Assembly: GCA_002269645.1 (NCBI GenBank)
Contig: NIVC01000035.1
Span: 248,001-312,000 of the forward strand
Reading direction: 5' to 3'
Origin: Macrostomum lignano
Lineage: Eukaryota
Length of the DNA stretch: 64,000 nucleotides
Part shown: in pieces, positions 1-56,404 of the stretch
Position numbering within the stretch: the stretch's first letter is position 1
Layout of the letters: the number at the start of each line of letters is the position of its first letter
Notes under the pieces: generated by a model
Told to the model about the DNA's origin: nothing
The model's input: the letters and a program-made list of their open reading frames with translations, nothing else
The model's database searches: none
Position numbers and translations under genes: made by a program

Positions 1-113
1 ACTACTATAAACCCTTATAGTTTTATATGCAAGTGAATTTAGACAATTGTTACTCGCATTTATGCATGTGCTGTTACATGTATGCAGAGTAAGCTAGGAG
101 AAGAATGGTTAAT

Positions 114-1560
114 GTCAAGTTCACCGTGAACTTCTCACTCTTGATCGCAGGCCTTATTTAATCCAGTCAGCATCGCGAGAAGCCGCAGGCCAGATGCACA
201 GAAAGAAAAGCGCATTGAACGCGCTGGCGCCCAAATAGCTAGCAAAGCAGATTTTGTCTTTGTGTCGCACTAAAAAGGATAGAAAAACGGCCAAGCGTCG
301 GGCAATTATCGACCGTCGTTTCTCAGCGGACTCGGACTGCGTGCGATGAGCTGCCACTTGAGGAAAACGGAAAACTGCAACAAAGGTGAAGAAGATCAGT
401 ATAAGCATCTGGGTGATTAGGAATGTTCCAACCAGAGGAATGATGTTCATCGACTTGGGCGCGGATTGGGAAGCGATGAGGACGTACAGCGTCATAGACA
501 TGATGATGGCGATTGACACGTTAGCTCGGTCGCCTTGCTGCTCAGCGAAGAACATGATACTAGCCAGTAGCGACAACAGTTCGTACGGCACAATCATCAG
601 GATTGCGTAATACGTCACGCGACGTTGCAGAAAGAATCGCAAATTGACAAACTGGAACGTGGAGCTGTTATCTACAACCATGTACTTGACGCTGTGGGTG
701 AGTCCGGCCAAGTCCCACTCGCCTACACTAAAAAAAGCGCTGCTATCAGACGTACTGGCACTCATTCTGCTGGTCAGAGTAAAGCTAAAAACGCTGGATG
801 GCGAGTTGATAGCTCCGATTTCCAGTGTGCACACCTGTCGATCAAATGGAAATAAACGCATATCCAGAGAGCAAGGAAATTGGATCACTGTGTAAATGTA
901 GGTAAATACGGAACCATCCGGAGACGCGATTGTTTCGAGGAATTTCGAGTTGCGCAAATCGAACAACTCGACCGATTTAGCGTTCCAATAGCCGATGTCG
1001 GGTATTCACAGGCTGTTCCTGTCAAGTCGTATCTGATTCACGCCAGTCTCAGTAGCGTTCCAGGCTAGTCTTGGATCGCGCCACGACATCAGTACCCAGC
1101 CGGACCATTCTAGCAGTTCTTCATCACCTAGTCCGTAGACTGTCTTCACATCAATGTTCACATGTACGGTGGTGTTGTAACCACTGAGACTGGGTGGCTG
1201 CATAGACCGGCACTGGGACAGATACTGCGGGCCGACGCTCTGAGTCAGGGCTCTGCAGACGGGTCCGTCAGTGTTGGTTGACGGATCCAGGCAGTCTGAA
1301 GGCTGCAGCGTTAGAGCCAAGGCTAGAAACAGTAATTGCATGTGTTCTTGCATAACTATATATTACTCTAGACTTATTGCTTAATGATGGACAGTTGGAA
1401 TTTGTGAGCACTTGTCTGAGACAAGCTTTCTGCCTCACTAATTATAATACCAAGGGATATGGAGCAGTGGAGACAAGTTGCAAGCTTTTGATTGGCTAGC
1501 GGAGCTGCGTACGATAGAAGTCAATTATTAAGGGAATGCGAAATCCATGGCAGTTCGGCA
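114..1560. repeat. Tandem duplicated segment, copy 1 (partner about 4850-6290)
   Basis: Direct alignment at offset about 4736 from tcaagttcaccgtg through catggcagttcggcag. Weaker homology continues (about 1700-1990 vs about 7440-7790). Confidence 0.92.
154..1353 (-). pseudogene. Intronless atypical nAChR-like Cys-loop ion channel subunit, copy 1, with one in-frame premature stop (TGA at 1008-1006; TGG/Trp in copy 2)
   Basis: ORFs 1006..1353 and 154..966 lie in one frame spanning 1200 nt and are colinear with intact copy 2. Signal peptide, Cys-loop CSLDMRLFPFDRQVC and four TM segments are present. The only disruption is AGC CTG TGA ATA versus AGC CTG TGG ATA. Confidence 0.88.
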
Positions 1561-2409
1561 GACATAAGCTGAACATTTTAGAGGCAATCAGACACAGGCT
1601 TCTTGATATTACGAACTGATGCGATAAGTTACAATGCCCAAGTTTTATTAAAGCAGTGGAAACTGCACTGGTATCGAAGCTATGCTCAGTGAATTCAGCC
1701 AGATACTTTACCCAGTAAATATTTCAAGCAGGTTGAACAAACTCCGTCGAAGCAAGAGTACCAGCTTGAACCAGCTAAACAAACTACTTGAGAACCTCTT
1801 GTTTCATCTGTAGAAAAGCAAAAGCAATTTTTTTTGATTCGAGAAAACTTTCAGTCAGCAGCAGCGGTGACTTAGCTGTCGGTTTGGTAAGCAAAGGAGA
1901 TTAATAATTTACCGATATGGGACTGCAGAAAAGGAATAGGACTAGACAGCAACTGTTTACCTGCTAAAACACTTCACAGTGATGAAATGTTTGAAAAGTG
2001 GAATTGAACAAGTTTTGGACGCTTGCTAAAAGCTTTAACTTTGCCTTATTAAGGAACCCTTTATGATCAGGCATCGGACTTTGTTTCGGTATGACTTGGC
2101 ATTATAATGTACCTTTTGCAATTGAATTCGTCCAAACTGCAACACCTTTCGTACACTAATTGCTTTCTTAACGGGAGTTAAATTTAGATCAGGCCATAGA
2201 CAGCTGCACAAAACGTTTCATCCAGTTTACAAAACATTTCTTGCCAATCCCAGCGGAATTGATTCAAGAATGGAGACACTTTACCGGTATTTGATAGAAA
2301 GCAGCACAAAATAAACAGTGTCAATGTGAGAAAGTTAAAGCAAAATTTCACTATTTGATTTTTCCATTGATGGCACTTCTCTAGTGCAATCATGTGCTGT
2401 GCAGCTTCT

Positions 2410-2860
2410 TCAAGCTCACTCTTCAATATCTGCATTCGCCAGGTATGCAAAGTCAGGTTCGCGACAGCGGCGGCTTGCCGTATAGAGTTCCTGTTGAACT
2501 GCTGGAACTGATAGGGCCCTCTTCACTGCTGCCTTCAGAGAAGAAACTGCTCGATCACCCGGTTTGGTTGAGTCACGGAGAGTACGGTAGCAGTTGAAAG
2601 GTGCTGTGCTCCAGTGATTCAAGTCCCCTCATAAAATATAACCACCTACTCAGCCTAGCAGAACGTCTAGCTACGCCAAGCAGAGTCAAGTTTTTTCCGC
2701 ACTGGCCGCATACTCGCACTGTTCTCATAGTTCGATTTGCACATCCTTGAGTTCTCGTCCTCCAAACTCTCGGCCCAAATTCATCTAGAAAGATCAGGTT
2801 TCCACCGTGTCCTTCGTTAATCATACTCTGTGTAAACTCATATCTCGCCGCCTTCACAAC
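2410..2860 (-). mobile_element. Decayed Tc1/mariner-IS630-type DDE transposase fragment
   Basis: Minus-strand translation gives LIFLDEFG..WRTRTQG..GQCGKNLTLL, then LPYSP*LN..IE..SSLKAAVKR across frameshifts and stops, matching the D(E)xG and YSPxLNPIE motifs of this superfamily. Confidence 0.75.
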
Positions 2861-4849
2861 CTGGGTAGCTCCGTATGTATAAACTTTTTAGTCCGCATTG
2901 AACAGGTGACAAACCAAATAAAAGAGCCATGCATTAATTGACTTGCTCTTAACTCATTTTATTTAATGAAATCTTTGAAGACTGCCACTGGTATTAAAAT
3001 ATTGGTTTCAAATGTGGCCTTGGTGCCGGAAAGAGTATTTGTAAGAGAGCAGTCCATCAGAGACGCGCTCCGTAACCTTCTCGAAACAAATTATACTAAT
3101 GCCCCAGTAGCATGCTGTACGTCTGTTCTTTTACCCCAAGTAGGATCCCAGAAAGGATTCGCCACCCTACTCAAGAGTCTCCTGCTAAAGCTGCTGCCCG
3201 TCCCGTCCAATCAGCATCGGGTGATCGCAGTTTCCTCAAACGTGAGACTTGTAGACAGCCACCGAATGAGTGTTGCGTCACCCAAAACCAACTTAATTTA
3301 TACATGCCCTCAAAAGTATTCTTATGCAGCCACCGAGAAGGTTTAATCAAATGTGGAGTCGGTGCAATTAGAGGCCAGAGGTGAAATCGCCTGCAAGCTC
3401 TGTGTGCTGCTACGATCAGAGGGGGATGTACAACATCCTGATTGGGTCCATAGGCCCCAACGTCTACGGGCACGGGAGCCCATACCCCTTTGAACAGCCA
3501 AAAATCATGTTGTCACACCAAATGCTGACTACTCTTAGGCTAGTAGGCTGAACTCCGCAGCCAATTAGATTCTCGCATTATTGCAGCCCTAGCAGAGAAT
3601 TCAGTGCTTCTGTGAGACCTGCAGGAAGCCTTGAGAAATCTACATAAAAATTGGCGCCTTGCTGGGCAAAAAATGAGCAGAGTCAAAAAGTAGAGCTGCA
3701 AAACTGTCTGCTAGCCTCAGGTCTCAGAGCTTTATTGGAGTATGGGAGAATGAAAATGGCAGAAAAAAAAGTAAAAGCACGAGTAGAGTCAATCAAAATG
3801 CTCGGCGGTCAAATAGTGGCAGTCAATTTGGGGTACTCAATCAATGTCGTGCTTTGCATGCACACACACACACACATACACGCACACACAGGCAGGTCCT
3901 TCAAGCTACGGTGCGACTCAAGCTAAAAGCTACGGTGCGACAGTACGGAGAGGCCGAACTCTAAAGGGGAAAGGCCAGAGATATGGGAGAAAAATCAGTA
4001 GAAAATAGATATAAAGTAATAAATCTTGACTTTGTAATACAAAAAATCAATTGCACAAACAGATGGTCCAAAAACTGGTCAAGCCAAAATATTCGGCACC
4101 ACAAGTGTGAAAATTTGATCGAAAAAAAGCTAAACCTAAAATTAAAGAAATGGAGAAGGGATGACGAAAGCCTGGGGAAGATGGGACAAGAGGGGAGAAA
4201 TAGATAAATTGTCAAAATCCTGGCGGCCACCAGAATGTCATCCTGTGCCATCCACATGTGCATATCCGCAGTGCAGATAAGTGGTACAGAATGGTGCAAA
4301 TATTAATTGTCCAAACATTGGAAAGCAAACCAATTAAATTAAACTCGGACAACATATACTCGCGTTAAGGAAAAAATTTGAATGAATATACAATCGATGC
4401 GACGAGGAACAAATACGCTTTTCTGAATGTTGACACTTCAAATTCGTATTTGCAGAGTGCTTTAGGTACATAGGAGGTACTTTATGCCAGTGCAAATATC
4501 AGATAGCTATTCCGTTGACTTCTTGTTAGCATGAAACAACTGAGACACCTCTACATGTAGAGAGTTTTTTGAAAATTAATTGCATTCCAAAGTCGAATCC
4601 ATCGAATGAATTCTGAGAAACGTAAGAGGGTTTTGCCACGGTACCGTAATATTTAGTTTTTAAAAATTACCATATTGTAACATCACTGGTTAATAGATCA
4701 GTTTTGACAATTTTATGGGTGGAGACACGTTACAAGGTAGAAGGGTGTTTAAAAAGGGCAATAAGAGACTCACTGAAGGGGTACAGAATAACAGGGTGCA
4801 GGGAGTCACTCACTGCAAAGGTAAACGATATAGTAGCTAAATTTTTAGT

Positions 4850-6290
4850 GTCAAGTTCACCGTGTACTTCTCACTCTTGATCGCGAGCCTTATTTAATCC
4901 AGTCAGCATCGCGAGAAGCCGCTGGCCAGATGCACAGAAAGAAAAGCGCATTGAACGCGCTGGCGCCCAAATAGCTAGCAAAGCAGATTTTGTCTTTGTG
5001 TCGCACTAAAAAGGACAGAAAAACGGCCAAGCGTCGGGCAATTATCGACCGTCGTTTCTCAGCGGACTCGGACTGCGTGCGATGAGCTGCCACATGAGGA
5101 AAACGGAAAACTGCAACAAAGGTGAAGAAGATCAGTATAAGCATCTGGGTGATTAGGAATGTTCCAACCAGAGGAATGATGTTCATCGACTTGGGCGCGG
5201 ATTGGGAAGCGATGAGGACGTACAGCGTCATAGACATGATGATGGCGATTGACACGTTAGCTCGGTCGCCCTGCTGCTCAGCGAAGAACATGATACTAGC
5301 CAGTAGCGACAACAGTTCGTACGGCACAATCATCAGGATTGCGTAATACGTCACGCGACGTTGTAGAAAGAATCGTAGATTGTAGAACTGAAACTCGGAG
5401 TTGGCAGCCCCAGCCATGTACTTGACGCTGTGGGTGAGTCCGGCCAAGTCCCACTCGCCTACACTAAAAAAAGCGCTGCTATCAGACGTACTGGCACTCA
5501 TTCTGCTGGTCAGAGTAAAGCTGAAAACGCTGGATGGCGAGTTAATAGATCCGATTTGTAGTGTGCACACCTGTCGATCAAATGGAAATAGACGCATATC
5601 CAGAGAGCAAGGAAACTGGGTCACTGTGTAAATGTAAGTAAATACGGAACCATCCGGAGACGCGATTGTTTCGAGGAATTTCGAGTTGCGCAAATCGAAA
5701 AACTCGACCGATTTAGCGTTCCAATAGCCGATGTCGGGTATCCACAGGCTGTTCCTGTCAAGTCGCATCTGATTCACGCCAGTCTCAGTAGCGTTCCAGG
5801 CTAGTCTTGGATCGCGCCACGACATCAGTACCCAGCCGGACCATTCTAGCAGTTCTTCATCGCCTAGTCCGTAGACTGTCTTCACATCGATGTTCACGTG
5901 TACGGTTGTGTTGTAACCACTGAGACTGGGTGGCTGCATAGACCGGCACTGGGACAGATACTGCGGGCCGACGCTCTGAGTCAGGGCTCTGCAGACGGGT
6001 CCGTCAGTGTTGGTTGACGGATCCAGGCAGTCTGAAGGCTGCAGCGTTAGAGCCAAGGCTAGAAACAGTAATTGCATGTGTTCTTGCATAACTATTACTC
6101 TGGACTTATTTCTTAATGATGGACAGTTGGAATTTGTGAGCACTTGTCTGAGTCAATCTTTCGGCCTCACTAAATACCAAGGGATATGGAGCAGTGGAGC
6201 CTAGTTGCACGCTTTTGATTGGCTAGCAGAACTGCATATGATAGAATTCGGTTATTAAGGGAAAGCGAAATACATGGCAGTTCGGCAGTT
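4850..6290. repeat. Tandem duplicated segment, copy 2 (partner 114-1560)
   Basis: Direct alignment with copy 1. Confidence 0.92.
4890..6089 (-). CDS. Intronless atypical nAChR-like Cys-loop ligand-gated ion channel subunit, copy 2 (399 aa from ATG 6089)
   Basis: Signal peptide MQEHMQLLFLALALTLQPSDC; SWRDPRLAW and WIPDIGYWN motifs; C-x13-C Cys loop with FPFD; GEW; M1-M4 with GDR before M2 and a short M3-M4 loop. No vicinal Cys in loop C and no loop-B Trp (GSINS). The ORF track start at 6143 is a GTG, so the first ATG is used. Confidence 0.93.
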   Translation of the reverse strand: MQEHMQLLFLALALTLQPSDCLDPSTNTDGPVCRALTQSVGPQYLSQCRSMQPPSLSGYNTTVHVNIDVKTVYGLGDEELLEWSGWVLMSWRDPRLAWNATETGVNQMRLDRNSLWIPDIGYWNAKSVEFFDLRNSKFLETIASPDGSVFTYIYTVTQFPCSLDMRLFPFDRQVCTLQIGSINSPSSVFSFTLTSRMSASTSDSSAFFSVGEWDLAGLTHSVKYMAGAANSEFQFYNLRFFLQRRVTYYAILMIVPYELLSLLASIMFFAEQQGDRANVSIAIIMSMTLYVLIASQSAPKSMNIIPLVGTFLITQMLILIFFTFVAVFRFPHVAAHRTQSESAEKRRSIIARRLAVFLSFLVRHKDKICFASYLGASAFNALFFLCIWPAASRDADWIK

Positions 6291-6429
6291 CGACAAAACT
6301 TGAGGTCTTTCGCCTCGGAAAAGCACAACAAAGCGCTGGTTTCGATGTAATACACACTGATGCAAAAACGTACAAAGCCCAACAACAGAAGAAAATTTCC
6401 TGATAGGTCTTAAAACAATATCAGCGTCA

Positions 6430-6950
6430 TAGGGCACTTTTTCGAGCTAGGGCGCAAACATAGGCCGCACTGCCGACAGAATCATGCATGTCCCAGCGGT
6501 AGGCAGCTGCAGGACTTCCTGCACTGGCTGTAGGCAGAACGACTCGGTGCGGCCTGTCAGCTGTAGACGCACCAGGCTCGCGCGACGATACAGTACCACG
6601 TAGGCAACTTCCTCATCGCCAATCTTGAAGACTGCGCATTGCAGGCCAGCGTGCGCGGCGTTAACTTGATGCTGGAACGATTCTCAACGCTGTAAAGCAG
6701 CACTACCTGGAACAACGCCGCCCTCTGACGCCATATAACGTAAGCCTCGTGGCTATCCCGCGGTGATGCCGCAGATCCTCGCGAACCAGACTGCCGAGAT
6801 AGACGAATTGCTGACGATCGAAGTCCTGTTGCCTATCCATCATCGCCTCCGCACAAAAATCGCAGCCTGCATGGAAGTCGTCCAGCACCCAGGGCACGGC
6901 GGTTTTCTGCGTGTCTTCACCAGGCCAGCACTCGTCGCAGCAGCAACCAA
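6430..6950 (-). mobile_element. Decayed non-LTR retrotransposon (RTE-like LINE) RT C-terminal fragment
   Basis: Across frameshifts: AGL..QKT, FVYLGSLV, VLLYSVE, AAHAGL..AVFKIG..LYRRA..RLQL..ESFCLQPVQEVL, which is the typical order of RT C-terminal motifs in RTE/L2-like LINEs. Confidence 0.72.
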
Positions 6951-7999
6951 ATTTTCAGTTTTTGCTGGTCTCTCTCGACGGTTGAGAAAAGTGTTGAAGT
7001 TTTTTAATATACGAGTATGAAAATTATAATCAGGATATACATGTACTGGGATATTGGTGCCTCCTGGATGACCTCAGCGAAGAGCCAAGACCTGCACCAT
7101 TGTGTTGCTTTGGGAGCAAAGCAACCCATTGCTTTGACAAGATCCGACAAAAACCCATTTGTCGGATCTAAATGCATTATGTCCTTTTGCAGCTAACTGA
7201 CTTTTTCTATGACCATATTCCCTCCAGTACTTTCATTCTCCTATCTATTCAATCCATGGCTAAACCTACCGCATTCCCCACTCAGACTATATAAGTCTTA
7301 AGCAGGCCCGCCCAAAAAAAATCAGTACCCGTATGTTTTCTTTCCAACATCAAATATACGACCTTGTAATCGGCTAGTTCATTTTCAAACAACACCGTTT
7401 TTTAATCTTAAATTACTATATTGCAATACGCGAAACTCGTGCTTACACAATGGACTAATAGTACCTAAACTTTACCCCGTGAATATTTCAAGAATTCTAA
7501 ACAGTCTGTCAATAATTAAAGGGAATCAGTGTGTACACGGGCACACGGGCACATAAGGAACAAGGTTAGCACGAGAGCCTTCTTCTGCCTTACCTATAGA
7601 AAAGCAAATGCAACTTTCAGATTCGAGAAAAACTTTCTGTCTGTCCACAGCAGCACTTTCTTTACCTATCGGCTTGGTAAGCTGAAGTCTAAGAGATGAA
7701 TAATTTACCGATATGTGACTTGCAGAAACAGAAATGGCCTTCCTCAAACCCACTCCACCAATGACGAAATGATGGAAATATGGTAGGAAACAAGTTTTTC
7801 TTTTTAGCTTTGGGGCAAAAAAGTGTCTTTGCCTTATTATAGGCACCTATGGTTTAGCAGACGACTCTATGAAGCTGTGACTTAGCATTAATTAGTACAT
7901 GTTTTTCGTCAGTACTCCAGACATTTGACATTTTGCAGTGGAGAGTAAGCTCAGGAAGAGTTTTGGGGCAGGTCAACATACGTGTATGAGTTTGATTGC

Positions 8000-11488: not shown

Positions 11489-30319
<18,831 letters not shown>

Positions 30320-33142: not shown

Positions 33143-34962
33143 GAGTGACAGGGAGAATAACAGGCAGTGTGACAGACTGAGTGACAGGGAGAATAACAGA
33201 CAGTGTGACAGACTGAGTGACAGGGAGAATAACAGAAAGTGTGACAGACGGAGTGACAGGGAGAATAACAGAAAGTGTGACAGACGGAGTGACAGGGAGA
33301 ATAACAGACAGTGTGACGAGCTGAGTGACAGGGAGAATAACAGAAAGTGTGACAGACGGAGTGACAGGGAGAATAACAGAAAGTGTGACAGACGGAGTGA
33401 CAGGGAGAATAACAGAAAGTGTGACAGACGGAGTGACAGGGAGAATAACAGAAAGTGTGACAGACGGAGTGACAGGGAGAATAACAGAAAGTGTGACAGA
33501 CGGAGTGACAGGGAGAATAACAGACAGTGTGACGAGCTGAGTGACAGGGAGAATAACAGAAAGTGTGACAGACGGAGTGACAGGGAGAATAACAGAAAGT
33601 GTGACAGACGGAGTGACAGGGAGAATAACAGAAAGTGTGACAGACGGAGTGACAGGGAGAATAACAGACAGTGTGACGAGCTGAGTGACAGGGAGAATAA
33701 CAGACAGTGTGACGAGCTGAGTGACAGGGAGAATAACAGAAAGTGTGACAGACTGAGTGACAGGGAGAATAACAGGCAGTGTGACAGACTGAGTGACAGG
33801 GAGAATAACAGAAAGTGTGACAGACTGAGTGACAGGGAGAATAACAGACAGTGTGACAGACTGAGTGACAGGGAGAATAACAGAAAGTGTGACAGACGGA
33901 GTGACAGGGAGAATAACAGAAAGTGTGACAGACGGAGTGACAGGGAGAATAACAGACAGTGTGACGAGCTGAGTGACAGGGAGAATAACAGACAGTGTGA
34001 CGAGCTGAGTGACAGGGAGAATAACAGAAAGTGTGACAGACTGAGTGACAGGGAGAATAACAGGCAGTGTGACAGACTGAGTGACAGGGAGAATAACAGA
34101 AAGTGTGACAGACTGGGTGACAGGAGGAATAACAGACAGTTTGACAAGCTGAGTGACAGGGAGAATAACAGACAGTGTGACAGACGGAGTGGCAGGGAGA
34201 ATAACAGACAGTGTGACAGACTGAGTGGCAGGGAGAATAACAGACAGTTTGACAGACTGAGTGACAGGGAGAATAACAGAGAGTGTGACAGACTGAGTGA
34301 CAGGGAGAATAACAGAAAGTGTGACAGACTGGGTGACAGGAGGAATAACAGACAGTTTGACAAGCTGAGTGACAGGGAGAATAACAGACAGTGTGACAGA
34401 CGGAGTGGCAGGGAGAATAACAGACAGTGTGACAGACTGAGTGGCAGGGAGAATAACAGACAGTGTGACAGACTGAGTGGCAGGGAGAATAACAGACAGT
34501 GTGACAGACTGAGTGACAGGGAGAATAACAGAGAGTGTGACAGACTGAGTGACAGGGAGAATAACAGAGAGTGTGACGAGCTGAGTGACAGGGAGAATAA
34601 CAAACAGTGTGACAGACGGAGTGGCAGGGAGAATAACAGGCAGTGTGACAGACTGAGTGACAGGGAGAATAACAGACAGTGTGACAAGCTGAGTGACAGG
34701 GAGAATAACAGACAGTGTGACAGACGGAGTGACAGGGAGAATAACAAACAGTGTGACAGACTGAGTGACAGGGAGAATAACAGAGAGTGTGACAGACTGA
34801 GTGACAGGGAGAATAACAGTGTGACAGACTGAGTGACAGGGAGAATAACAGAAAGTGTGACAGACTGAGTGACAGGGAGAATAACAGACAGTGTGACAGA
34901 CGGAGTGACAGGGAGAAAAACAGACAGTGTGACAAGCTGAGTGACAGGGAGAATAACAGAAA
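33143..34962 (+). repeat. 36-bp minisatellite, about 50 copies
   Basis: Unit gacagactgagtgacagggagaataacagacagtgt. Confidence 0.97.
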
Positions 34963-35456
34963 TTTGACAGGGACAGGGACCCATCTTAGCTCCCTTCCCC
35001 AACACCTGCCTTCCCCGTCCCCCCTCTCCTTCCACTCCATCAAGTCGGGTGACGCAATGGAGGCACGCAAACTGCAGGTTAGCAATCCCTGTCTGTATAT
35101 TCGGTCTGTACATACTAAAATAGTTTCTACCGGAGTCGAACTGCAGTAACGTCTCGTTCGCTATCTCACTCTTGGATTTTAGATGCGTGACGATGTAATG
35201 ACAAAAGACCTCCCGCTGTGACCAATGCTCCACCATCACGCTCTGATAAATGGCAGTGCCCCACCTCCACTAAAGCTGCTAAATGACTAGGCTTAGCGAC
35301 TCAACCTCCAGTTCGTGACTGACAAGGCGAAGTTCCTGGCTGACTTCCAAGAGTTGCCAGTTCTCCGGGTCTTTGTTCTACTGCTGGCGATTAGTAGGTC
35401 CGCTTTGATCTGGATTGGGGCTTGCAGCTTGGCAGCTACTGACACCCGACTGCCAA

Positions 35457-37612
35457 ATGAAGGGAGAGGATGAAGGGAGAGGATGAAGGGGAGAGGTTAT
35501 GAAGGGAGAGAATAAAGGGAGAGAATGAAGAGAGAGAATAAAGGGAGAGAATGAATGGAGAGAATGAAGGGAGAGAATGAAGGGAGAGAATGAAGGGAGA
35601 TAGTGAAGGATGAGAATGAAGGGAGATAGTGAAGGGAGAGAATGAAGGGAGAGAATGAAAGGAGAGAATGAAGGGAGAGAAATAAGGTAGAGATGAAGGG
35701 AGAGAATGAAGGGAGAGAATGAAGAGGGAGAATGAAGAGGGAGAATGAAGGGAGAGAATGAAGAGGGAGAATGAAGAGGGAGAATGAAGGGAGAAAATGA
35801 AGAGGGAGAATGAAGAGGGAGAATGAAGGGAGAAAATGAAGAGGGAGAATGAAGGGAGAGAATGAAGAGGGAGAATGAAGAGGGAGAATGAAGGTAGAGA
35901 ATGAAGGGAGAGAATGAAGAGGGAGAATGAAGAGGGAGAATAAAGGGAGAGAACGAAGGGAGAGAACGAAGGGAGAGAATGAAGAGAGAGAATGAAGAGG
36001 GAGAATGAAGAGGGAGAATGAAGGGAGAGAATGAAGGGAGAGAATGAAGAGGGAGAATGAAGAGGGAGAATGAAGGGAGAGAATTAAGGGAGAGAATGAA
36101 GGGGGAAAATGAAGGGGGAGAATGAAGAGGGAGAATGAAGAGGGAGAATGAAGAGGGAGAATGAAGGGAGAGAATGAAGAGGGAGAATGAAGAGGGAGAA
36201 TAAAGGGAGAGAACGAAGGGAGAGAACGAAGGGAGAGAATGAAGAGAGAGAATGAAGAGGGAGAATGAAGAGGGAGAATGAAGAGGGAGAATGAAGGGAG
36301 AGAATGAAGAGGGAGAATGAAGGGAGAGAATGAAGAGGGAGAATGAAGAAGGAGAATGAAGAGGGAGAATGAAGAGGGAGAATGAAGGGAGAGAATGAAG
36401 GGAGAGAATGAAGGGAGAGAATGAAGAGAGAGAATGAAGGGAGAGAATGAAGAGGGAGAATGAAGAAGGAGAATGAAGAAGGAGAATGAAGAGGGAGAAT
36501 GAAGAGGGAGAATGAAGGGAGAGAATGAAGGGAGAGAATGAAGAGGGAGAATGAAGAGGGAGAATGAAGGGAGAGAATGAAGGGAGAGAATGAAGGGGGA
36601 AAATGAAGGGGGAGAATGAAGGGGGAAAATGAAGGGGGAGAATGAAGAGGGAGAATGAAGAGGGAGAATAAAGGGAGAGAATGAAGAGGGAGAATGAAGG
36701 GAGAGAATGAAGGGGGAAAATGAAGGGGGAGAATGAAGAGGGAGAATGAAGAGGGAGAATGAAGAGGGAGAATGAAGAGGGAGAATGAAGGGAGAGAATG
36801 AAGAGGGAGAATGAAGGGAGAGAATGAAGGGGGAAAATGAAGAAGGAGAATGAAGAAGGGGAATGAAGAGGGAGAATGAAGAGGAAGAATGAAGGGAGAG
36901 AATGAAGGGAGAGAATGAAGGGAGAGAATGAAGAGAGAGAATGAAGAGGGAGAATGAAGAGGGAGAATGAAGAGGGAGAATGAAGAGGGAGAATGAAGGG
37001 AGAGAATGAAGAGGGAGAATGAAGGGAGAGAATGAAGAGGGAGAATGAAGAAGGAGAATGAAGAGGGAGAATGAAGAGGGAGAATGAAGGGAGAGAATGA
37101 AGGGAGAGAATGAAGGGAGAGAATGAAGAGAGAGAATGAAGGGAGAGAATGAAGAGGGAGAATGAAGAAGGAGAATGAAGAAGGAGAATGAAGAAGGAGA
37201 ATGAAGAGGGAGAATGAAGAGGGAGAATGAAGGGAGAGAATGAAGGGAGAGAATGAAGGAGAGAATGAAGGGAGAGAATGAAGGGGGAAAATGAAGGGGG
37301 AGAAGGAAGAAGGAGAATGAAGAGGGAGAATGAAGGGAGAGAATGAAGAGGGAGAATGAATGGAGAGAATGAAGGGAGAGAATGAAGGGAGAGAATGAAG
37401 GGAGAGAATGAAGAAGGAGAATGAAGAGGGAGAATGAAGGGAGAGAATGAAGGGAGAGAATGAAGGGAGAGAATGAAGAAGGAGAATGAAGAGGGAGAAT
37501 GAAGGGAGAGAATGAAGAGGGAGAATGAAGGGAGAGAATGAAGGGAGAGAATGAAGGGAGAGAATGAAGGGAGAGAATGAAGAAGGAGAATGAAGAGGGA
37601 GAATGAAGGGAG
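35457..37612 (+). repeat. 13-bp polypurine minisatellite (gaatgaagggaga / gaatgaagaggga)
   Basis: Direct inspection; the same family occurs at 39420-40100. Confidence 0.96.
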
Positions 37613-38299
37613 ACAGTAAGATCAGTGAAAGCAGCGCTGGATTGCTGAGCACACCGACCCTGACTCTGCAATGGTCAATACCCGAATTTTTTAAATCAAT
37701 CGCTTGTAAAACTTCACAAAGAAGCCATTGCGATACAAGAAAGCTCGAACGGAGGCTGACCCAGAAGCCTCTCCCAGATGAGAGCGATACCAGCAGACAG
37801 TTGGGAAAATTGCTTGGACAAGTTCTCATATCAATAAGCTTCATCAGTCCAGATCCCCTTTTGAGTGGTTCCGCGCGGCGAGGTCAGGCCGACTGTGTAG
37901 CTGACGGTTGTGCGATCGGACACTCAAGATAAATCTGACAGCGTAAAGACTAAAAAACAACTGCGCTAGGAATATGGATTGGGGTCAGGCCATGGACCGC
38001 TAGAGTTAGAGATCCGGATTTAGACAGCACTACAAAAAATTCATCAAATTCCTTTGTTCGTCCATTCCGCTGACTCCTGAGTACAACACAAGTGCGCCAA
38101 CACTGTACGCATACACGATCACACACGATCAATGGCAAGCAATGTAGACTCTCTGTACTTTGATTTGGTTCCGGTTCATTTGGGGCTTATATGCGCGAAA
38201 ATTAACCAGGGGGTTGTCAGTCAATTAATTCACAGCCATTTGAGCCAACTCCCAAGGCACAGACAATGTACATGCCTGACGATTAGAAAGTCAGGGCCA

Positions 38300-43267: not shown

Positions 43268-43884
43268 GCCAATTATCACACAGTGAAGCAGGTGATCAGA
43301 AGCGTGATATTTTGTTGGTTTCCCAGCCACCTTGCCAGCTATGCTCAGTCACCTTAACAAGTTATTGAACATGCAAACAGATTCTCTTCTACTCATTTTT
43401 CCAGTTCTGAAATTTCCTCAACTTTATGCCAGCAATAATATGCCCACAGGAGCAAACAATGACACACGCCTTGCGCAATATGAACCCATTGTATTCCTAA
43501 ATTGCGCGAATAACACCCTTGGACATGGAATCGGGTTAGAGGGGTCACAGAGGTCAAACTGAGATCCGTGTGCGATACAGGGCGATTCCCAGTTTGTTTT
43601 GGTTGAAAGCGAAAGCCGTGCAGAGACTGAGCTGTCGCCGTAACCTGCATGGTTATTAAAACAAATACGGGCAAAGTTCTAAACAGAAGCAGCGATAGGG
43701 GTCCCGCGACCCTGATTTCCAGGGAAGCTCTGTTTGTTCCCCGAAGCCCGTCTGATGACTGGGAGTTTGGAGCAACAGCCCGCGGCTCCAACAGTGTAGC
43801 GCGGTTTTGTGTATCCGACGGAGTCTGCTGGGCAGGTGGGCAGTGAGAGTAGAGTTGGAGACTGTAATTGAGGGTAAAAAAGAG

Positions 43885-45130
43885 GGTGAAATGTAGGGTA
43901 GAAGTGAGAATGAACTGGAGCATAGAAGAGAGGATGAACTGGAGGGTAGAAGAGAGGATGAACTGGAGGTTAGAAGAGAGGATGAACTGGAGGGTAGAAG
44001 AGAGGATGAACTGGAGGGTAGAAGAGAGGATGAACTGGAGGGTAGAAGAGAGGGTGAGCTGGTGGGTAGAAGAGAGGATGAGCTGGTGGGTAGAAGAGAG
44101 GATGAACTGGAGGGTAGAAGAGAGGATGAGCTGGTGGGTAGAAGAGAGGATGAACTGGAGGGTAGAAGAGAGGATGAACTGGAGGGTAGAGGAGAGGGTG
44201 AACTGGAGGGTAGAAGAGAGGATGAGCTGGTGGGTAGAAGAGAGGATGAACTGGAGGGTAGAAGAGAGGATAAACTGGAGGGCAGAAGACAGGGTGAACT
44301 GGAGGGTAGAAGAGAGGATGAACTGGAGGATAGAAGAGAGGGTGAACTGGAGGATAGAAGAGAGGGTGAACTGGAGGGTAGAGGAGAGGGTGAACTGGAG
44401 GGTAGAAGAGAGGGTGAACTGGAGGATAGAAGAGAGGGTGAACTGGAGGATAGAAGAGAGGGTGAACTGGAGGATAGAAGAGAGGGTGAACTGGAGGGTA
44501 GAAGAGAGGATGAACTGGAGGGTAGAAGAGAGGGTGAACTGGAGGATAGAAGAGAGGGTGAACTGGAGGATAGAAGACAGGGTGAACTGGAGGGTAGAAG
44601 AGAGGATGAACTGGAGGGTAGAAGAGAGGGTAAACTGGAGGGTAGAAGAGAGGATGAACTGGAGCATAGAAGAGAGGATGAACTGGAGGGTAGAAGAGAG
44701 GGTGAAATGCAGGGTAGAAGAGAGGGTGAAATGCAGGGTAGAAGAGAGGATGAACTGGAGGGTAGAAGAGAGGGTGAAATGCAGGGTAGAAGAGAGGGTG
44801 AAATGCAGGGTAGAAGAGAGGATGAACTGCAGGGTAGAAGAGAGGGTGAACTGGAGGGTAGAAGAGAGGATGAACTGCAGGGTAGAAGAGAGGATGAACT
44901 GCAGGGTAGAAGAGAGGGTGAACTGGAGGGGTAGAAGAGAGGGTGAACTGGAGGGGTAGAAGAGAGGATGAACTGGAGGGGTAGAAGAGAGGGTGAACTG
45001 GAGGGGTAGAAGAGAGGGTGAACTGGAGGGGTAGAAGAGAGGGTGAACTGGAGGGGTAGAAGAGAGGATGAACTGGAGGGGTAGAAGAGAGGGTGAACTG
45101 GAGGGGTAGAAGAGAGGATGAACTGGAGGG
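43885..45130 (+). repeat. 24-bp minisatellite (gaactggagggtagaagagaggat) with 25-bp variants at the 3' end
   Basis: Direct inspection. Confidence 0.96.
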
Positions 45131-45621
45131 TATGATAAGGCATTTAAGGCGATACCCAGGAGCAGACGAGTCTGCATACTTGAGCAATGCCTGTCGCTGT
45201 TTTTTCTTGTCTTGGACTCGTGACTCACACAGTCTTCACTCCCCATTCATATTTCAAGGTCCCGGCCTTCCCGCCAGGGGGCGGAGCCTCTATATGTAAG
45301 CAAACTTTGCTCAAGTCAACCAGAAAAAACCCATGGGCTCCGCTTCCCTTTCAATTGTCTCTGGTTTCTAAATTCTACGCTCTGAAATATGACCAAGTTA
45401 GCAAAACCAAACTCTGGCGTGATGCGGCAGTTTGTCAAGCAGATAAAAAGCAATCCTGGATAAAGTTTGGTGACCTTATTAACTTATCAGCGAGAATGTC
45501 GTTATTGTAAGACTATTTGCGGTCTGAATTGAATTTAATTCTTCAATTATTCAATGAAACTCAATCAAATAATTTTTGGTTTTTGTTTTTAATTTGTAAG
45601 GTATTTTGCTGCCTTAAACAG

Positions 45622-46330: not shown

Positions 46331-49300
46331 GAGCTGATGAGAAATGATGAATTTCTGTGTATGTGATTAGAACATGGCGATCATATTTTCATCAAGTACG
46401 GGTATTGGGTGTCAAATCCTTCAACAGTCGATTAACTTATATCTTTATAACTTGTGCAAGTTTAACATCCAACACACCGTGACTGAACCAAAAATGAAAG
46501 CCTGACTAAAATTTAAATAAAATAAAAGCAAGTTAGTTCTTGCTCCTTCATGATTAGGGATTTAAATTTTTTGCTTAAGCGAGCGAGCATAGTTTGAAAT
46601 CGAATTATAGTCGCTTGATTGACAGCAGCAGTTTTTTTTTGGGAGGAAGGGGGAGTTTTATCCCCCTAAACTCGTTTGTGGGTCTGGCTGGTAGGATGAG
46701 GCAGTTTGATGAGTTGGTAAACAAGCTCGAATCGAGTAAAGGTCGCCATTGGCTATTCAGCACCAGCCTCCAGAGCCATGCGACATCACTTAATTCATAT
46801 TGGATCGCCAGTTTTAATAGTTAGCCAAACAAACAAATTGGGGGGCTCCGGGGATTGACAGATGGGATGCGAGCTGAGCACAGTGTTTTATGATGCCTTA
46901 CATAATGTTGAAACGCATGCATCAAGCAGCAGGATGCCTGTGTTTTCTGAAGCCTTGAACTGCTCTCCGATGCTTCAGGAAGCCTAAACTTCAGTGTGTT
47001 GTAACCTACACTTCATGATACTGTAACCTACACTTCATGATACTGTAACCTACACTTCATGAAAATGTAACCTACACTTCATGAGACTGTAACCTACACT
47101 TCATGATACTGTAACCTACACTTCATGAGACTGTAACCTACACTTCATGATACTGTAACCTACACTTCATGAGACTGTAACCTACACTTCATGATACTGT
47201 AACCTACACTTCAGGATGCTGTAACCTACACTTCAGGACGTTGTAACTTACACTTCATAATACTGTAACCTACACTTCAGGATGTTGTAACCTACACTTC
47301 AGGATGCTGTAACCTACAATTCATGATACTGTAACCTACACTTCATGAGACTGTAACCTACACTTCATGATGCTGTAACCTACACTTCATGATACTGTAA
47401 CCTACACTTCATGATACTGTAACCTACACTTCATGATACTGTAACCTACACTTCATGATACTGTAACCTACACTTCATAATACTGTAACCTACACTTCAT
47501 GATACTGTAACCTACACTTCATGATGCTGTAACCTACACTTCATGATACTGTAACCTACACTTCATGATACTGTAACCTACACTTCATGATACTGTAACC
47601 TACACTTCATGATACTGTAACCTACACTTCATGATACTGTAACCTACACTTCATGATACTGTAACCTACACTTCATGATACTGTAACCTACACTTCATGA
47701 TACTGTAACCTACACTTCATGATACTGTAACCTACACTTCATGATACTGTAACCTACACTTCATGATGCTGTAACCTACACTTCATGATACTGTAACCTA
47801 CACTTCATGATACTGTAACCTACACTTCATGATACTGTAACCTACACTTCATGAGACTGTAACCTACACTTCAGGATGCTGTAACCTACACTTCATGATA
47901 CTGTAACCTACACTTCATGATACTGTAACCTACACTTCATGATACTGTAACCTACACTTCATGATACTGTAACCTACACTTCATGAGACTGTAACCTACA
48001 CTTCATGATACTGTAACCTACACTTCATGATACTGTAACCTACACTTCATGATACTGTAACCTACACTTCATGATACTGTAACCTACACTTCATGAAAAT
48101 GTAACCTACACTTCATGAGACTGTAACCTACACTTCATGAAGCTGTAACCTACACTTCATGATACTGTAACCTACACTTCATGATACTGTAACCTACACT
48201 TCATGAGACTGTAACCTACACTTCATGATACTGTAACCTACACTTCAGGATGCTGTAACCTACACTTCAGGACGTTGTAACTTACACTTCATAATACTGT
48301 AACCTACACTTCAGGATGTTGTAACCTACACTTCAGGATGCTGTAACCTATACTTCAGGATGTTGTAACCTACACTTCAGGACGTTGTAACTTACACTTC
48401 ATAATACTGTAACCTACACTTCAGGATGTTGTAACCTACACTTCAGGATGCTGTAACCTATACTTCAGGATGTTGTAACCTACACTTCAGGATGCTTTAA
48501 CCTATACTTCATAATACTGTAGCTTACACTTCATAATACTGTAACCTACACTTCAGGATGCTGTAACCTACACTTCAGGGTGCTGTAACCTACACTTCAG
48601 GGTGCTGTAACCTACACTTCAGGGTGCTGTAACCTACACTTCAGGATGCTGTAACCTACACTTCAGGATGCTGTAACCTACACTTCAGGGTGCTGTAACC
48701 TACACTTCAGGGTGCTGTAACCTACACTTCAGCTGATGAGAAATGATGAATTTCTGTGTATGTGATTAGAACATGGCGATCATATTTTCATCAAGTACGG
48801 GTATTGGGTGTCAAATCCTTCAACAGTCGATTAACTTATATCTTTATAACTTGTGCAAGTTTAACATCCAACACACCGTGACTGAACCAAAAATGAAAGC
48901 CTGACTAAAATTTGAATAAAATAAAAGCAAGTTAGTTCTTGCTCCTTCATGATTAGGGATTTAAATTTTTTGCTTAAGCGAGCGAGCATAGTTTGAAATC
49001 GAATTATAGTCGCTTGATTGACAGCAGCAGTTTTTTTTTGGGAGGAAGGGGGAGTTTTATCCCCCTAAACTCGTTTGTGGGTCTGGCTGGTAGGATGAGG
49101 CAGTTTGATGAGTTGGTAAACAAGCTCGAATCGAGTAAAGGTCGCCATTGGCTATTCAGCACCAGCCTCCAGAGCCATGCGACATCACTTAATTCATATT
49201 GGATCGCCAGTTTTAATAGTTAGCCAAACAAACAAATTGGGGGGCTCCGGGGGATTGACAGATGGGATGCGAGCTGATCACAGTGTTTTATGATGCCTTA

Positions 49301-50440
49301 CATAATGTTGAAACGCATGCATCAAGCAGCAGGATGCCTGTGTTTTCTGAAGCCTTGAACTGCTCTCCGATGCTTCAGGAAGCCTAAACTTCAGTGTGTT
49401 GTAACCTACACTTCATGATACTGTAACCTACACTTCATGATACTGTAACCTACACTTCATGAAAATGTAACCTACACTTCATGAGACTGTAACCTACACT
49501 TCATGATACTGTAACCTACACTTCATGAGACTGTAACCTACACTTCATGATACTGTAACCTACACTTCATGATACTGTAACCTACACTTCATGATACTGT
49601 AACCTACACTTCATGAGACTGTAACCTACACTTCATGATACTGTAACCTACACTTCATGATACTGTAACCTACACTTCATGATACTGTAACCTACACTTC
49701 ATGAGACTGTAACCTACACTTCATGATACTGTAACCTACACTTCATGATACTGTAACCTACACTTCATGATACTGTAACCTACACTTCATGATACTGTAA
49801 CCTACACTTCATGATACTGTAACCTACACTTCATGATACTGTAACCTACACTTCATGATACTGTAACCTACACTTCATGATACTGTAACCTACACTTCAT
49901 GATACTGTAACCTACACTTCAGGATGTTGTAACCTACACTTCAGGATGCTGTAACCTATACTTCAGGATGTTGTAACCTACACTTCAGGACGTTGTAACT
50001 TACACTTCATAATACTGTAACCTACACTTCAGGATGTTGTAACCTACACTTCAGGATGCTGTAACCTATACTTCAGGATGTTGTAACCTACACTTCAGGA
50101 TGCTTTAACCTATACTTCATAATACTGTAGCTTACACTTCATAATACTGTAACCTACACTTCAGGATGCTGTAACCTACACTTCAGGGTGCTGTAACCTA
50201 CACTTCAGGGTGCTGTAACCTACACTTCAGGGTGCTGTAACCTACACTTCAGGATGCTGTAACCTACACTTCAGGGTGCTGTAACCTACACTTCAGGGTG
50301 CTGTAACCTACACTTCAGGGTGCTGTAACCTACACTTCAGGGTGCTGTAACCTACACTTCAGGATGCTGTAACCTACACTTCAGGGTGCTGTATTCTATA
50401 CTTCAGGGTGCTGTATTCTATACTTCAGGGTGCTGTAACA
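46331..50440 (+). repeat. Tandem duplication (period 2399 bp): about 660 bp unique sequence plus a 22-bp minisatellite (ctgtaacctacacttcatgata) in each unit
   Basis: agctgatgagaaatgatg begins at about 46332 and 48731; identical ORFs at 46594 and 48993; arrays at about 46995-48731 and about 49395-50437. Confidence 0.95.
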
Positions 50441-52114: not shown

Positions 52115-53601
52115 GTCTACTCTCCTCTCCTTCCTCTCCTCTCCTCTCCTCTCCTCTCCTCTCCACTCCTCTCCTCCTCTCCTCTCCTGTCCTCTCCTCT
52201 CATCTCATCTCCTCTCCTCTCCTCTCCTCTCCTCTCCTCTCCTCTCCTCTCCTCTCCTCTCCTCTCCTCTCCTCTCCTCTCCTCTCCTCTCCTCTCCTCT
52301 CCTCTCCTCTCCTTTCCTCTCCTCTCATCTCCTCTCCTCTCCTCTCATCTCCTCTCCTCTCCTCTCCTCTCCTCTCCTCTCCTCTCCTCTCCTCTCCTCT
52401 CCTCTCCTCTCATCTCCTCTCCTCTCCTCTCCTCTCATCTCCTCTCCTCTCCTCTCCTCTCCTCTCCTCTCCTCTCCTCTCCTCTCCTCCTCTCCTCTCC
52501 TCTCCTCTCCTCTCCTCTCCTCTCCTCTCCTTTCCTCTCCTCTCATCTCCTCTCCTCTCCTCTCATCTCCTCTCCTCTCCTCTCCTCTCCTCTCCTCTCC
52601 TCTCCTCTCCTCTCCTCTCCTCTCATCTCCTCTCTCTCTCCTCTCCTCTCATCTCCTCTCCTCTCCTCTCCTCTCCTCTCCTCTCCTCTCCTCTCCTCTC
52701 ATCTCCTCTCCTCTCCTCTCCTCTCCTCTCCTCTCCTCTCCTCTCCTCTCCTCTCCTCTCTCCTCTCCTCTCCTCTCCTCTCCTCTCCTCTCCTCTCCTC
52801 TCCTCTCCTCTCCTCTCCTCTCCTCTCCTCTCCTCTCCTCTCCTCTCCTCTCCTCTCCTCTCCTCTCCTCTCCTCTCCTCTCCTCTCCTCTCATCTCCTC
52901 TCCTCTCCTCTCCTCTCCTCTCCTCTCCTCTCCTCTCCTCTCCTTTCCTCTCCTCTCATCTCCTCTCCTCTCCTCTCATCTCCTCTCCTCTCCTCTCCTC
53001 TCCTCTCCTCTCCTCTCCTCTCCTCTCCTCTCCTCTCATCTCCTCTCCTCTCCTCTCCTCTCATCTCCTCTCCTCTCCTCTCCTCTCCTCTCCTCTCCTC
53101 TCCTCTCCTCTCATCTCCTCTCCTCTCCTCTCCTCTCCTCTCCTCTCCTCTCCTCTCCTCTCCTCTCCTCTCCTCTCATCTCCTCTCCTCTCCTCTCCTC
53201 TCCTCTCCTCTCCTCTCCTCTCCTCTCCTCTCCTCTCCTCTCCTCTCCTCTCCTCTCCTCTCCTCTCTCCTCTCCTCTCCTCTCCTCTCCTCTCCTCTCC
53301 TCTCATCTCTCTCTCTCTCTCCTCTCCTCTCCTCTCCTCTCCTCTCCTCTCCTCTCCTCTCCTCTCCTCTCCTCTCCTCTCCTCTCCTCTCCTCTCCTCT
53401 CCTCTCCTCTCCTCTCCTCTCCTCTCCTCTCCTCTCTCTCCTCTCCTCTCCTCTCCTCTCCTCTCCTCTCCTCTCCTCTCCTCTCCTCTCTCTCCTCTCA
53501 TCTCATCTCCTCTCCTCTCCTCTCCTCTCCTCTCCTCTCCTCTCCTCTCCTCTCCTCTCCTCTCCTCTCCTCTCCTCTCCTCTCCTCTCCTCTCATCTCC
53601 C
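52115..53601 (+). repeat. (CTCCT)n polypyrimidine satellite, about 1.5 kb
   Basis: Direct inspection. Confidence 0.96.

Positions 53602-54348: not shown

Positions 54349-56404
<2,056 letters not shown>

What the first reader, a model, noticed from the sequence alone, without database searches (positions are those of the whole stretch)
640..5413. Hypervariable loop-C cassette between two otherwise near-identical receptor paralogs
Seen: manual alignment of the 1200-nt frames gives 15 differences in one 38-bp tract (640-677 vs 5376-5413; M-VVDNSSTFQFV-NL vs M-AGAANSEFQFY-NL, 7 of 11 residues changed). Only 21 differences occur in the other about 1160 bp (14 synonymous, 7 not). Several remaining amino-acid changes also sit near binding loops (E/Q and A/S at loop B, I/T before the Cys loop, L/F after loop A). 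Known: loop C caps the orthosteric pocket of Cys-loop receptors. Inference: the tract also holds 4 synonymous differences, so it is older than its surroundings. Either a specificity cassette was patched in by short-tract gene conversion from a third paralog, or the copies are homogenised by conversion everywhere except loop C. Both point to a ligand-diversifying receptor repertoire.
Basis: partly seen in the sequence, partly recalled or inferred. Interest (0 to 1): 0.85.

Follow-up and report, generated by a model that had tools for sequence, protein, structure and literature searches.

The report
Loop-C mosaic in duplicated receptor genes
Two neighbouring, almost identical genes for an orphan nicotinic-type ion-channel subunit differ sharply only in the 38 bases encoding the tip of binding loop C, a real gene-conversion-type mosaic, but one copy also carries a premature stop codon, so a working "ligand-diversifying repertoire" is not shown.

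Summary
The two intronless 1200-nt genes (copy A 154-1353, copy B 4890-6089, minus strand) differ at 36 sites. Fifteen of these lie in 640-677 / 5376-5413; 20,000 random placements never gave more than 8. The tract encodes the beta9-beta10 hairpin tip, which is loop C. Its synonymous divergence is about 0.60 against 0.05 elsewhere (p=4e-5), yet it is still homologous (23/38 identical). It therefore has an older ancestry than its surroundings, which fits non-allelic gene conversion and not point mutation under selection.

New points:
- Copy A has TGA in place of the loop-A Trp codon (1006-1008), so as assembled it is a pseudogene.
- Copy B's loop C resembles the only close relative (Macrostomum lignano, 51% identity); copy A's does not.
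- The 95.5%-identical block is only 1.45 kb. A collinear upstream flank is about 77% identical, which suggests older duplicates homogenised by conversion.
- dN/dS within the tract is below 1.
- Both copies lack the loop-B Trp and the loop-C Cys pair, so they are orphan receptors and not canonical ACh subunits.

No third paralog could be retrieved, so I cannot say whether the tract was imported or escaped homogenisation. This is a new member of a known kind, of moderate interest.

The parts
4890..6089 (-). Copy B: intact, intronless 399-codon gene for a nicotinic-type Cys-loop (pLGIC) subunit. The likely start is the ATG at 6089; the mechanical ORF runs on to a GTG at 6143.
   Evidence: Searches show the ORF. 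Pfam gives Neur_chan_LBD 1.4e-29 and Neur_chan_memb 1.6e-8. PDB nAChR beta4, beta2 and alpha7 match at about 1e-29. The AF2 model matches pLGIC structures at E about 1e-20. The Cys loop is C161-C175, with the FPFD motif.
154..1353 (-). Copy A: same length and frame as copy B, and 97% identical at the nucleotide level. It is interrupted by one in-frame TGA, so as assembled it is a pseudogene or null allele.
1006..1008 (-). Premature stop in copy A. Codon 116 is TGA; copy B has TGG. This is the Trp of the loop-A WxPD motif, which is invariant in all aligned relatives.
   Evidence: W116 is an invariant column.
640..677 (-). Loop-C tract of copy A (codons 226-238, M-VVDNSSTFQFV-NL). It is unlike the outgroup loop and creates an N-X-S sequon (NSS).
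   Evidence: It shares 1 of 11 residues with the M. lignano loop.
5376..5413 (-). Loop-C tract of copy B (M-AGAANSEFQFY-NL). It resembles the outgroup loop.
   Evidence: It shares 5 of 11 residues with the M. lignano loop 'NAAG-QEFGYY'.
109..1561 (-). High-identity block around copy A. It is 95.5% identical to 4845-6288 and covers about 208 bp upstream, the gene, and about 45 bp downstream.
4845..6288 (-). High-identity block around copy B.
1705..2051 (.). Older upstream flank of copy A. It is collinear with, and about 75-80% identical to, 7469-7839.
   Evidence: BLAST E 3e-19; alignments; no other copy in the window.
7469..7839 (.). Older upstream flank of copy B. About 1.05 kb of extra sequence (6289-7468) separates it from the block.

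Best explanation
Two same-strand duplicates, 4.7 kb apart, encode an orphan nicotinic-type Cys-loop receptor subunit. The source is probably a macrostomid-like flatworm (inferred). The duplicates form a mosaic produced by non-allelic (ectopic) gene conversion.

Shown: a 1.45-kb block bracketing the gene is near-identical. The 38 bp encoding the tip of loop C are homologous but about 30 times more diverged, with saturated synonymous sites. That segment therefore has a separate and much older ancestry.

Inferred: there are two possible routes.
(i) A short conversion patch (at least 38 bp and less than about 160 bp) copied a foreign loop C into copy A from an unseen third paralog. I lean slightly to this route, at about 0.4.
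(ii) The copies are older duplicates that conversion keeps homogenising up to both edges of loop C. The 40% mismatch there, possibly with selection, stops heteroduplex extension. I put this at about 0.35.

Copy B has the ancestral-like loop C and an intact frame. It would form a cation-type channel (pre-M2 'GDR') gated by an unknown ligand that is not acetylcholine. Copy A has the foreign loop C: it loses the conserved Glu and Tyr and gains an N-glycan sequon. It also has a very recent nonsense mutation, so it is currently non-functional, or a null allele, or a possible conversion donor.
For: - Cluster: 15 of 36 differences lie in 38 nt, against a random maximum of 8 in 20,000 trials.
- Synonymous divergence: pS is 0.60 in the tract and 0.051 elsewhere, Fisher p=4e-5.
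- The tracts are still homologous and in frame: 23/38 identical, P=4e-6 against a 25% expectation.
- The rest of the gene is under purifying selection: pN/pS = 0.007/0.051.
- The block ends sharply at 1561/6288. Further upstream there is a collinear flank of about 77% identity, E 3e-19, with no other copy in the window. This suggests the gene-sized block is itself conversion-homogenised.
- Divergence within the block is patchy: 0/182, 16/385, 0/109, 5/486.
- Polarity: copy B shares 5 of 11 loop residues with the M. lignano outgroup and copy A shares 1 of 11.
- The tract is loop C.
Against: - No donor or third paralog was found in the window or in public collections.
- With only two sequences, tree incongruence cannot be tested.
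- The patchiness outside the tract is only suggestive (scan-statistic p=0.069).
- The 77% flank could be a shared mobile-element fragment and not a relic of the duplication.
- Polarity rests on one outgroup at 51% identity (5/11 vs 1/11, which is not significant).
- The tract is more diverged than the old flank (15/38 vs about 23%, P=0.02). This fits route (ii) poorly unless the loop also evolved fast.
- Reads were not available to confirm either the tract or the TGA.
Confidence: 0.75

Rival explanations
1. Point mutations driven by positive, diversifying selection on loop C after a recent duplication, with no conversion involved.
For: Loop C caps the binding pocket, and 7 of 11 residues differ. 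In a related pair of Logan transcripts or contigs (L001/L002), 5 of 13 replacements fall in the 20 residues of loop C while synonymous differences are evenly spread. So loop C can evolve fast by ordinary substitution in this clade.
Against: Synonymous sites in the tract are also saturated: 5 of 8.3, including TTG/CTA, TTC/TTT and TTT/TTC, against 5% elsewhere (p=4e-5). Tract dN/dS is about 0.35, not above 1. Selection on amino acids does not explain a tenfold excess of silent changes confined to 38 bp.
Confidence: 0.06
2. Assembly or consensus artefact. The tract (or the TGA) comes from reads of another paralog or haplotype wrongly polished into one copy.
For: The window is very repeat-rich: about a third is mini- or microsatellite. 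Near-identical paralogs are hard to polish. No reads are available to check.
Against: The two copies sit in different flanking sequence on one contig. The tract has 15 substitutions, no indel, and keeps the reading frame and the conserved F233, Q234, F235, N237 and L238. This is not a typical error profile. Even if the tract were mis-polished, its sequence would still have to come from a real third paralog.
Confidence: 0.06
3. A complex one-step mutation (template switching at a quasi-palindrome, error-prone repair, or a compensated frameshift) rewrote the 38 bp without any paralogous donor.
For: A 7-mer in copy A's tract (TTGTAGA) is the reverse complement of TCTACAA in copy B's tract. I saw this by direct reading; by my estimate the chance expectation is about 0.2.
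Against: No 12-mer of either tract occurs elsewhere in the window, and only a single 11-mer does. No shifted alignment reduces the differences appreciably (inspection). The tract retains codon-level homology at 61% nt identity, which is what a paralogous loop C would show and random template DNA would not.
Confidence: 0.03
4. Both copies are functional and TGA-116 is a sequencing error or a rare allele. The pair would then be a true two-member specificity set with different loop C sequences maintained by selection.
For: Apart from the TGA, copy A shows no frameshift. The pair shows strong purifying selection (pN/pS about 0.13), so any inactivation is very recent. The derived replacements are shared between both copies.
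Against: As assembled, the stop is unambiguous and removes everything after residue 115. No expression or read data are available. This rival concerns function and is compatible with the conversion mechanism above.
Confidence: 0.25

Closest known systems
Macrostomum lignano Neur_chan_LBD proteins A0A1I8I4U5 / A0A1I8HUS3 / A0A1I8HYE3 (uncharacterised)
   Same: These are the only close relatives among about 15 billion proteins: 51% identity over residues 7-259. They share the WIPD loop A, the Cys loop with FPFD, Ile in place of the loop-B Trp, and a loop C without Cys-Cys. Their loop resembles copy B's.
   Different: The models are partial (271-273 aa, ending in M1). The three near-identical copies have identical loop C sequences, so there is no mosaic. 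They come from a different species.
Lineage-specific intronless, tandemly arrayed nAChR-like gene expansions in lophotrochozoans (Jiao et al. 2019, PMC6896357)
   Same: The genes here are also intronless nicotinic-type subunits lying next to each other, some are probably inactive, and their sequences diverge from canonical ACh subunits.
   Different: That paper reports retroposition plus tandem duplication in molluscs and annelids, with tens to hundreds of genes. A text search of it found no mention of gene conversion or of loop C. Here only two copies are seen, in a flatworm-like genome.
Cephalopod chemotactile receptors (nAChR-derived chemoreceptors; reviewed in PMC11526382)
   Same: They are nicotinic-type pentameric channel subunits that no longer bind acetylcholine, and their ligand-pocket residues are the evolving determinant. 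Here too the loop-B Trp and the loop-C Cys pair are absent.
   Different: No orthology is shown: the best named hits are generic 'nAChR alpha-like' proteins at 25-30% identity. Diversifying selection is not shown here (tract dN/dS below 1). A sensory role is pure speculation.
Short-tract ('micro') gene conversion between tandem paralogs, including conversion from or into a pseudogene copy (for example CYP21A2/CYP21A1P, MHC class I/II, opsin arrays; from my own knowledge of the literature, not checked here)
   Same: There is a sharply bounded patch of tens of bp with much older ancestry inside otherwise near-identical paralogs. One partner is inactivated. The divergent patch lies in the ligand-contact part of the protein.
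   Different: The donor is not identified here. The gene family (Cys-loop receptor, loop C) has not been described in this context in the searched literature: no paper contained all three terms 'loop C', 'gene conversion' and 'Cys-loop'.

Membership tests
Cys-loop receptor / pentameric ligand-gated ion channel superfamily | Extracellular ligand-binding domain (Neur_chan_LBD) followed by the transmembrane domain (Neur_chan_memb) | tested here: met
   Pfam PF02931 at 1.4e-29 (103.6 bits, cutoff 26) and PF02932 at 1.6e-8 (35.5 bits, cutoff 28.1).
Cys-loop receptor / pentameric ligand-gated ion channel superfamily | Two cysteines separated by 13 residues (the Cys loop), with the FPFD motif | tested here: met
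   C161-SLDMRLFPFDRQV-C175 is present in both copies. Both cysteines are invariant in the alignments.
Cys-loop receptor / pentameric ligand-gated ion channel superfamily | Beta-sandwich ectodomain plus four transmembrane helices | tested here: met
   The AF2 model (pLDDT 63.7) has beta strands over 61-244 and helices 246-271, 277-297, 305-328 and 348-391. Foldseek matches GABA-A, nAChR and GlyR chains at E about 1e-20.
Cys-loop receptor / pentameric ligand-gated ion channel superfamily | Pentameric assembly and ligand-gated conductance | not testable with these tools
   Needs expression and electrophysiology.
Acetylcholine-binding (alpha-type) nicotinic subunit | Vicinal Cys-Cys at the tip of loop C | tested here: not met
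   Loop C reads MAGAANSEFQFY in copy B and MVVDNSSTFQFV in copy A, with no cysteines.
Acetylcholine-binding (alpha-type) nicotinic subunit | Loop-B tryptophan (alpha7 W149) that makes the cation-pi contact | tested here: not met
   alpha7 'KFGSW' aligns with 'QIGSI'. Ile182 takes this position in both copies and in the M. lignano relatives.
Acetylcholine-binding (alpha-type) nicotinic subunit | Cation-selectivity signature before M2 (G-E-K type, acidic residue at -1') | tested here: inconclusive
   The sequence reads G-D-R, aligned to GEK. It is acidic at -1' and lacks the Pro-Ala-Arg anion motif. Selectivity is inferred from this, not measured.
Gene-conversion mosaic between paralogs | Differences clustered beyond chance in a bounded tract | tested here: met
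   15 differences in 38 nt, against a maximum of 8 in 20,000 random placements.
Gene-conversion mosaic between paralogs | The tract differs in age (synonymous divergence) from its surroundings | tested here: met
   pS is 0.60 in the tract and 0.051 elsewhere, p=4e-5.
Gene-conversion mosaic between paralogs | An identifiable donor, or incongruent trees for the tract and the rest of the gene | not testable with these tools
   Only two copies exist in the window, and no further paralog was found in any collection.
Pseudogene (copy A) | A disabling lesion in an otherwise conserved reading frame | tested here: met
   TGA at codon 116, where Trp is invariant. There are no frameshifts. Read support could not be tested.

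The most novel reading that the evidence does not exclude
The genome holds a family of Cys-loop receptor paralogs that gene conversion keeps near-identical everywhere except loop C. Loop C would then behave as an exchangeable specificity cassette, shuffled among functional and pseudogene copies. This would be a conversion-based way of diversifying the ligand pocket of an ionotropic receptor, analogous to pseudogene-templated diversification in immune receptor loci.
Probability: 0.1. Interest if true: 0.75.

Novelty: new member of a known kind. Interest (0 to 1): 0.38.

Why it matters
Mosaic paralogs, in which conversion homogenises everything but the ligand-contact segment, are well known for immune, opsin and chemoreceptor genes. 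In the literature I could search they have not been described for the loop C of a Cys-loop receptor. If further paralogs with other loop C versions exist, this locus would be a compact natural experiment on how loop C sets ligand specificity in an orphan flatworm channel clade that has lost the acetylcholine-binding residues. As it stands there are two copies, one of them with a stop codon. It is therefore a clean example of a known evolutionary process and not a new mechanism.

Tried and rejected
- Search for a donor in the window. tblastn with the whole protein and with loop peptides, pattern searches allowing 3 mismatches, and 11- and 12-mer seeds all found nothing.
- Search for further paralogs or orthologs. 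Two word-index protein searches, one full HMMER scan of 1.84 billion representatives, one metagenome scan with peptide patterns, and one DNA pattern scan bridging the tract were run. They found only the M. lignano trio (51% identity) and relatives at 36% or less. The exact-sequence look-up of copy B found no record.
- Species identification through the neighbouring A2M-like gene gave no hit.
- Compensated frameshift or shifted alignment of the tract: inspection shows no shift that lowers the mismatch count appreciably.
- Retroposition signature for the 1.45-kb block: no poly(A) tail or AATAAA at the 3' boundary.
- Mobile-element signature for the extra 1.05 kb upstream of copy B: no terminal repeats or target duplications. 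ORFs between the copies have no Pfam hit.
- Mosaic structure outside the tract: the 183-567 cluster gives p=6e-5 post hoc but only p=0.069 after a scan-statistic correction, so I treat it as suggestive only.
- Family-wide variability of loop C: in 104 broad nicotinic-type sequences loop C is average (rank 61 of 176). This sample is dominated by canonical YxCC subunits and is not the relevant close clade.
- No tRNA and no Rfam family occurs in the window.
Full report
**What is there**

The minus strand of the window carries two intronless 1200-nt reading frames. Copy A is 154-1353 and copy B is 4890-6089. Copy B encodes a 399-residue protein.
- It matches Pfam Neur_chan_LBD (1.4e-29) and Neur_chan_memb (1.6e-8).
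- Its best matches among solved structures are nicotinic beta4, beta2 and alpha7 subunits, at about 1e-29.
- An AlphaFold model (pLDDT 63.7) has a beta-sandwich ectodomain and four helices, and matches pLGIC chains at E about 1e-20.
- The Cys loop (C161...C175, with FPFD) can be read directly from the sequence.

No other copy exists in the 64 kb.

**Check of the observation**

- There are 36 nucleotide differences. Fifteen lie in codons 226-238 (640-677 vs 5376-5413). The other 21 are 14 synonymous and 7 nonsynonymous.
- Seven of 11 residues change in the tract.
- Random placement of 36 differences never put more than 8 in a 38-nt window in 20,000 trials.
- By Nei-Gojobori counting, the tract has pS 0.60 (5 of 8.3 sites) and pN 0.33. 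The rest of the gene has pS 0.051 and pN 0.007. Fisher p is 4e-5 for the synonymous contrast.
- The two tract versions are still homologous: 23 of 38 bases are identical (P=4e-6 against 25%), and length and frame are the same.

The tract is therefore a real segment with much older ancestry. It is not a cluster of selected point mutations. Tract dN/dS is about 0.35, so replacements are not in excess.

**Is it loop C?**

Yes. In the HMMER alignment to nAChR beta2 the tract lies over 'NENPDDSTYVDITYDF', and it lies over the equivalent segment of beta4. This is the beta9-beta10 hairpin. In the model, beta9 ends at residue 226, the turn is 227-231 and beta10 starts at 232.

Codon 116 of copy A is TGA (window 1006-1008); copy B has TGG. 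This is the Trp of the loop-A WxPD motif and is invariant in every alignment made. As assembled, copy A cannot make a receptor. The rest of the pair shows strong purifying selection (pN/pS about 0.13), there are no frameshifts, and derived replacements occur in both copies. The lesion is therefore very recent, or a null allele, or an error. Reads are needed to decide.

**Relatives and polarity**

- A full HMMER scan of 1.84 billion representatives found one close cluster: three near-identical partial Macrostomum lignano proteins at 51% identity. Everything else is at 36% or below.
- Word-index searches found nothing closer, and the exact protein is not on record.
- I infer that the source is a flatworm related to Macrostomum. 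The neighbouring gene gave no hit that could confirm this.
- The outgroup loop 'NAAG-QEFGYY' shares 5 of 11 tract residues with copy B and 1 of 11 with copy A.

Copy B therefore looks ancestral and copy A's loop looks foreign or derived. Copy A's loop loses the conserved Glu and Tyr and gains an NSS glycosylation sequon. This polarity rests on a single distant outgroup and is only suggestive.

**What kind of receptor**

Both copies and the M. lignano relatives have Ile where alpha7 has the loop-B Trp149. None has a Cys pair in loop C. The defining features of an acetylcholine-binding alpha subunit were tested and are not met. The pre-M2 'GDR' aligns with the cationic 'GEK' motif. I infer an orphan, probably cation-selective channel subunit with an unknown ligand.

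**How the mosaic arose**

- The high-identity block is only 1453 bp (109-1561 vs 4845-6288, 95.5% identical) and ends sharply.
- Upstream of it, both copies carry a collinear, same-orientation segment of about 350 bp at only 75-80% identity (1705-2051 vs 7469-7839, E 3e-19). Copy B has about 1.05 kb of extra sequence in between. No other copy of this segment occurs in the window.
- There is no poly(A) or retroposition signature at the block ends.
- A gene-sized island of 95% identity set in 77%-identical or unalignable flanks is what conversion-driven homogenisation of older duplicates produces.
- Divergence inside the block is also patchy: 0/182, 16/385, 0/109, then the tract, then 5/486. After scan-statistic correction this is only suggestive (p=0.069).

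The pattern therefore fits gene conversion acting at this locus, though none of these points proves it. Two routes to the loop-C island remain.
- (i) Import of a short patch of at least 38 bp from an unseen third paralog into copy A.
- (ii) Repeated homogenisation that stops at both edges of a loop that had already diverged.

The tract is more diverged than the old flank (15/38 vs about 23%, P=0.02; synonymous sites 5/8, P=0.02). This favours route (i) slightly. The absence of any visible third paralog, and the evidence that the whole block is homogenised, favour route (ii). I put them at about 0.4 and 0.35.

**Is loop C generally the fast part?**

The evidence is mixed.
- The three M. lignano copies have identical loops.
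- One related Logan pair (P0025/P0159) has no loop-C difference.
- Another pair (P0160/P0022, loci L001/L002) has 5 of its 13 replacements in the 20 loop-C residues, while its synonymous differences are evenly spread. That is ordinary fast substitution and not a mosaic.
- In a broad sample of 104 nicotinic-type sequences, loop C is only average in entropy (rank 61 of 176).

A 'ligand-diversifying repertoire' is therefore not demonstrated.

**Comparison with known systems**

- Intronless, tandem nicotinic-type expansions are described in molluscs and annelids (PMC6896357).
- nAChR-derived receptors that have lost ACh binding, with pocket residues under diversifying selection, are known in cephalopods (PMC11526382).
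- Short-tract conversion mosaics between paralogs, often involving a pseudogene partner, are textbook cases for CYP21, MHC and opsins (from my own knowledge).
- No paper in the searchable library combined 'loop C', 'gene conversion' and 'Cys-loop'.

**Verdict**

The functional conclusion is not, chiefly because one copy is interrupted and no repertoire is visible. This is a new member of a known kind, of moderate interest. It would rise substantially only if the full assembly shows several paralogs with swapped loop C versions.

Noticed in passing
window 1006-1008 (minus strand): Copy A has an in-frame TGA at the invariant loop-A Trp codon; copy B has TGG. The G-to-A change also turns GTGGAT into GTGAAT, which is closer to a 5' splice-donor consensus. 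This is probably irrelevant.
   Followed up: partly
window 1705-2051 and 7469-7839: Both receptor copies have a collinear upstream segment of about 77% identity, lying outside the 95.5% block. Copy B has about 1.05 kb of extra sequence (6289-7468) with no recognisable mobile-element ends.
   Followed up: partly
window ~12248-30319 (+ strand): A multi-exon alpha-2-macroglobulin/TEP-like gene with MG2, A2M_BRD, A2M, TED and receptor-binding domains. The thioester position reads 'PAGAAEN' where GCGEQ is expected, so the thioester is probably lost. A word-index search with its TED exon found no relative.
   Followed up: partly
window 13596-14189, 23200-25906, 27801-28811, 33143-37613, 43870-45132, 47000-50439, 52116-53600, 54349-56404 and others: Roughly a third of the window is mini- or microsatellite arrays with periods of 4-88 bp, including TAGA x514 and TCTCC x297. 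Strand composition skew there is extreme, with GC skew up to +/-0.8. Several arrays lie inside introns of the A2M-like gene.
   Followed up: no
window 21643-22043 and 27801-28811: The same 18-bp unit (AGGAGAGACTAGATCTAT) forms two separate arrays 6 kb apart, at about 85% identity to each other.
   Followed up: no
L002 ~857 (Logan DRR639838 contig) vs L001 316/317: A related receptor contig differs from its near-identical partner by a 1-bp indel in the coding region. This is why its called product (P0022) starts late. It may be another inactivated copy or a sequencing error.
   Followed up: no
window 644-895 (+ strand): An 83-codon antisense ORF is present only opposite copy A. It starts at a TTG inside the loop-C tract. 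It is a mechanical ORF with no supporting evidence.
   Followed up: no
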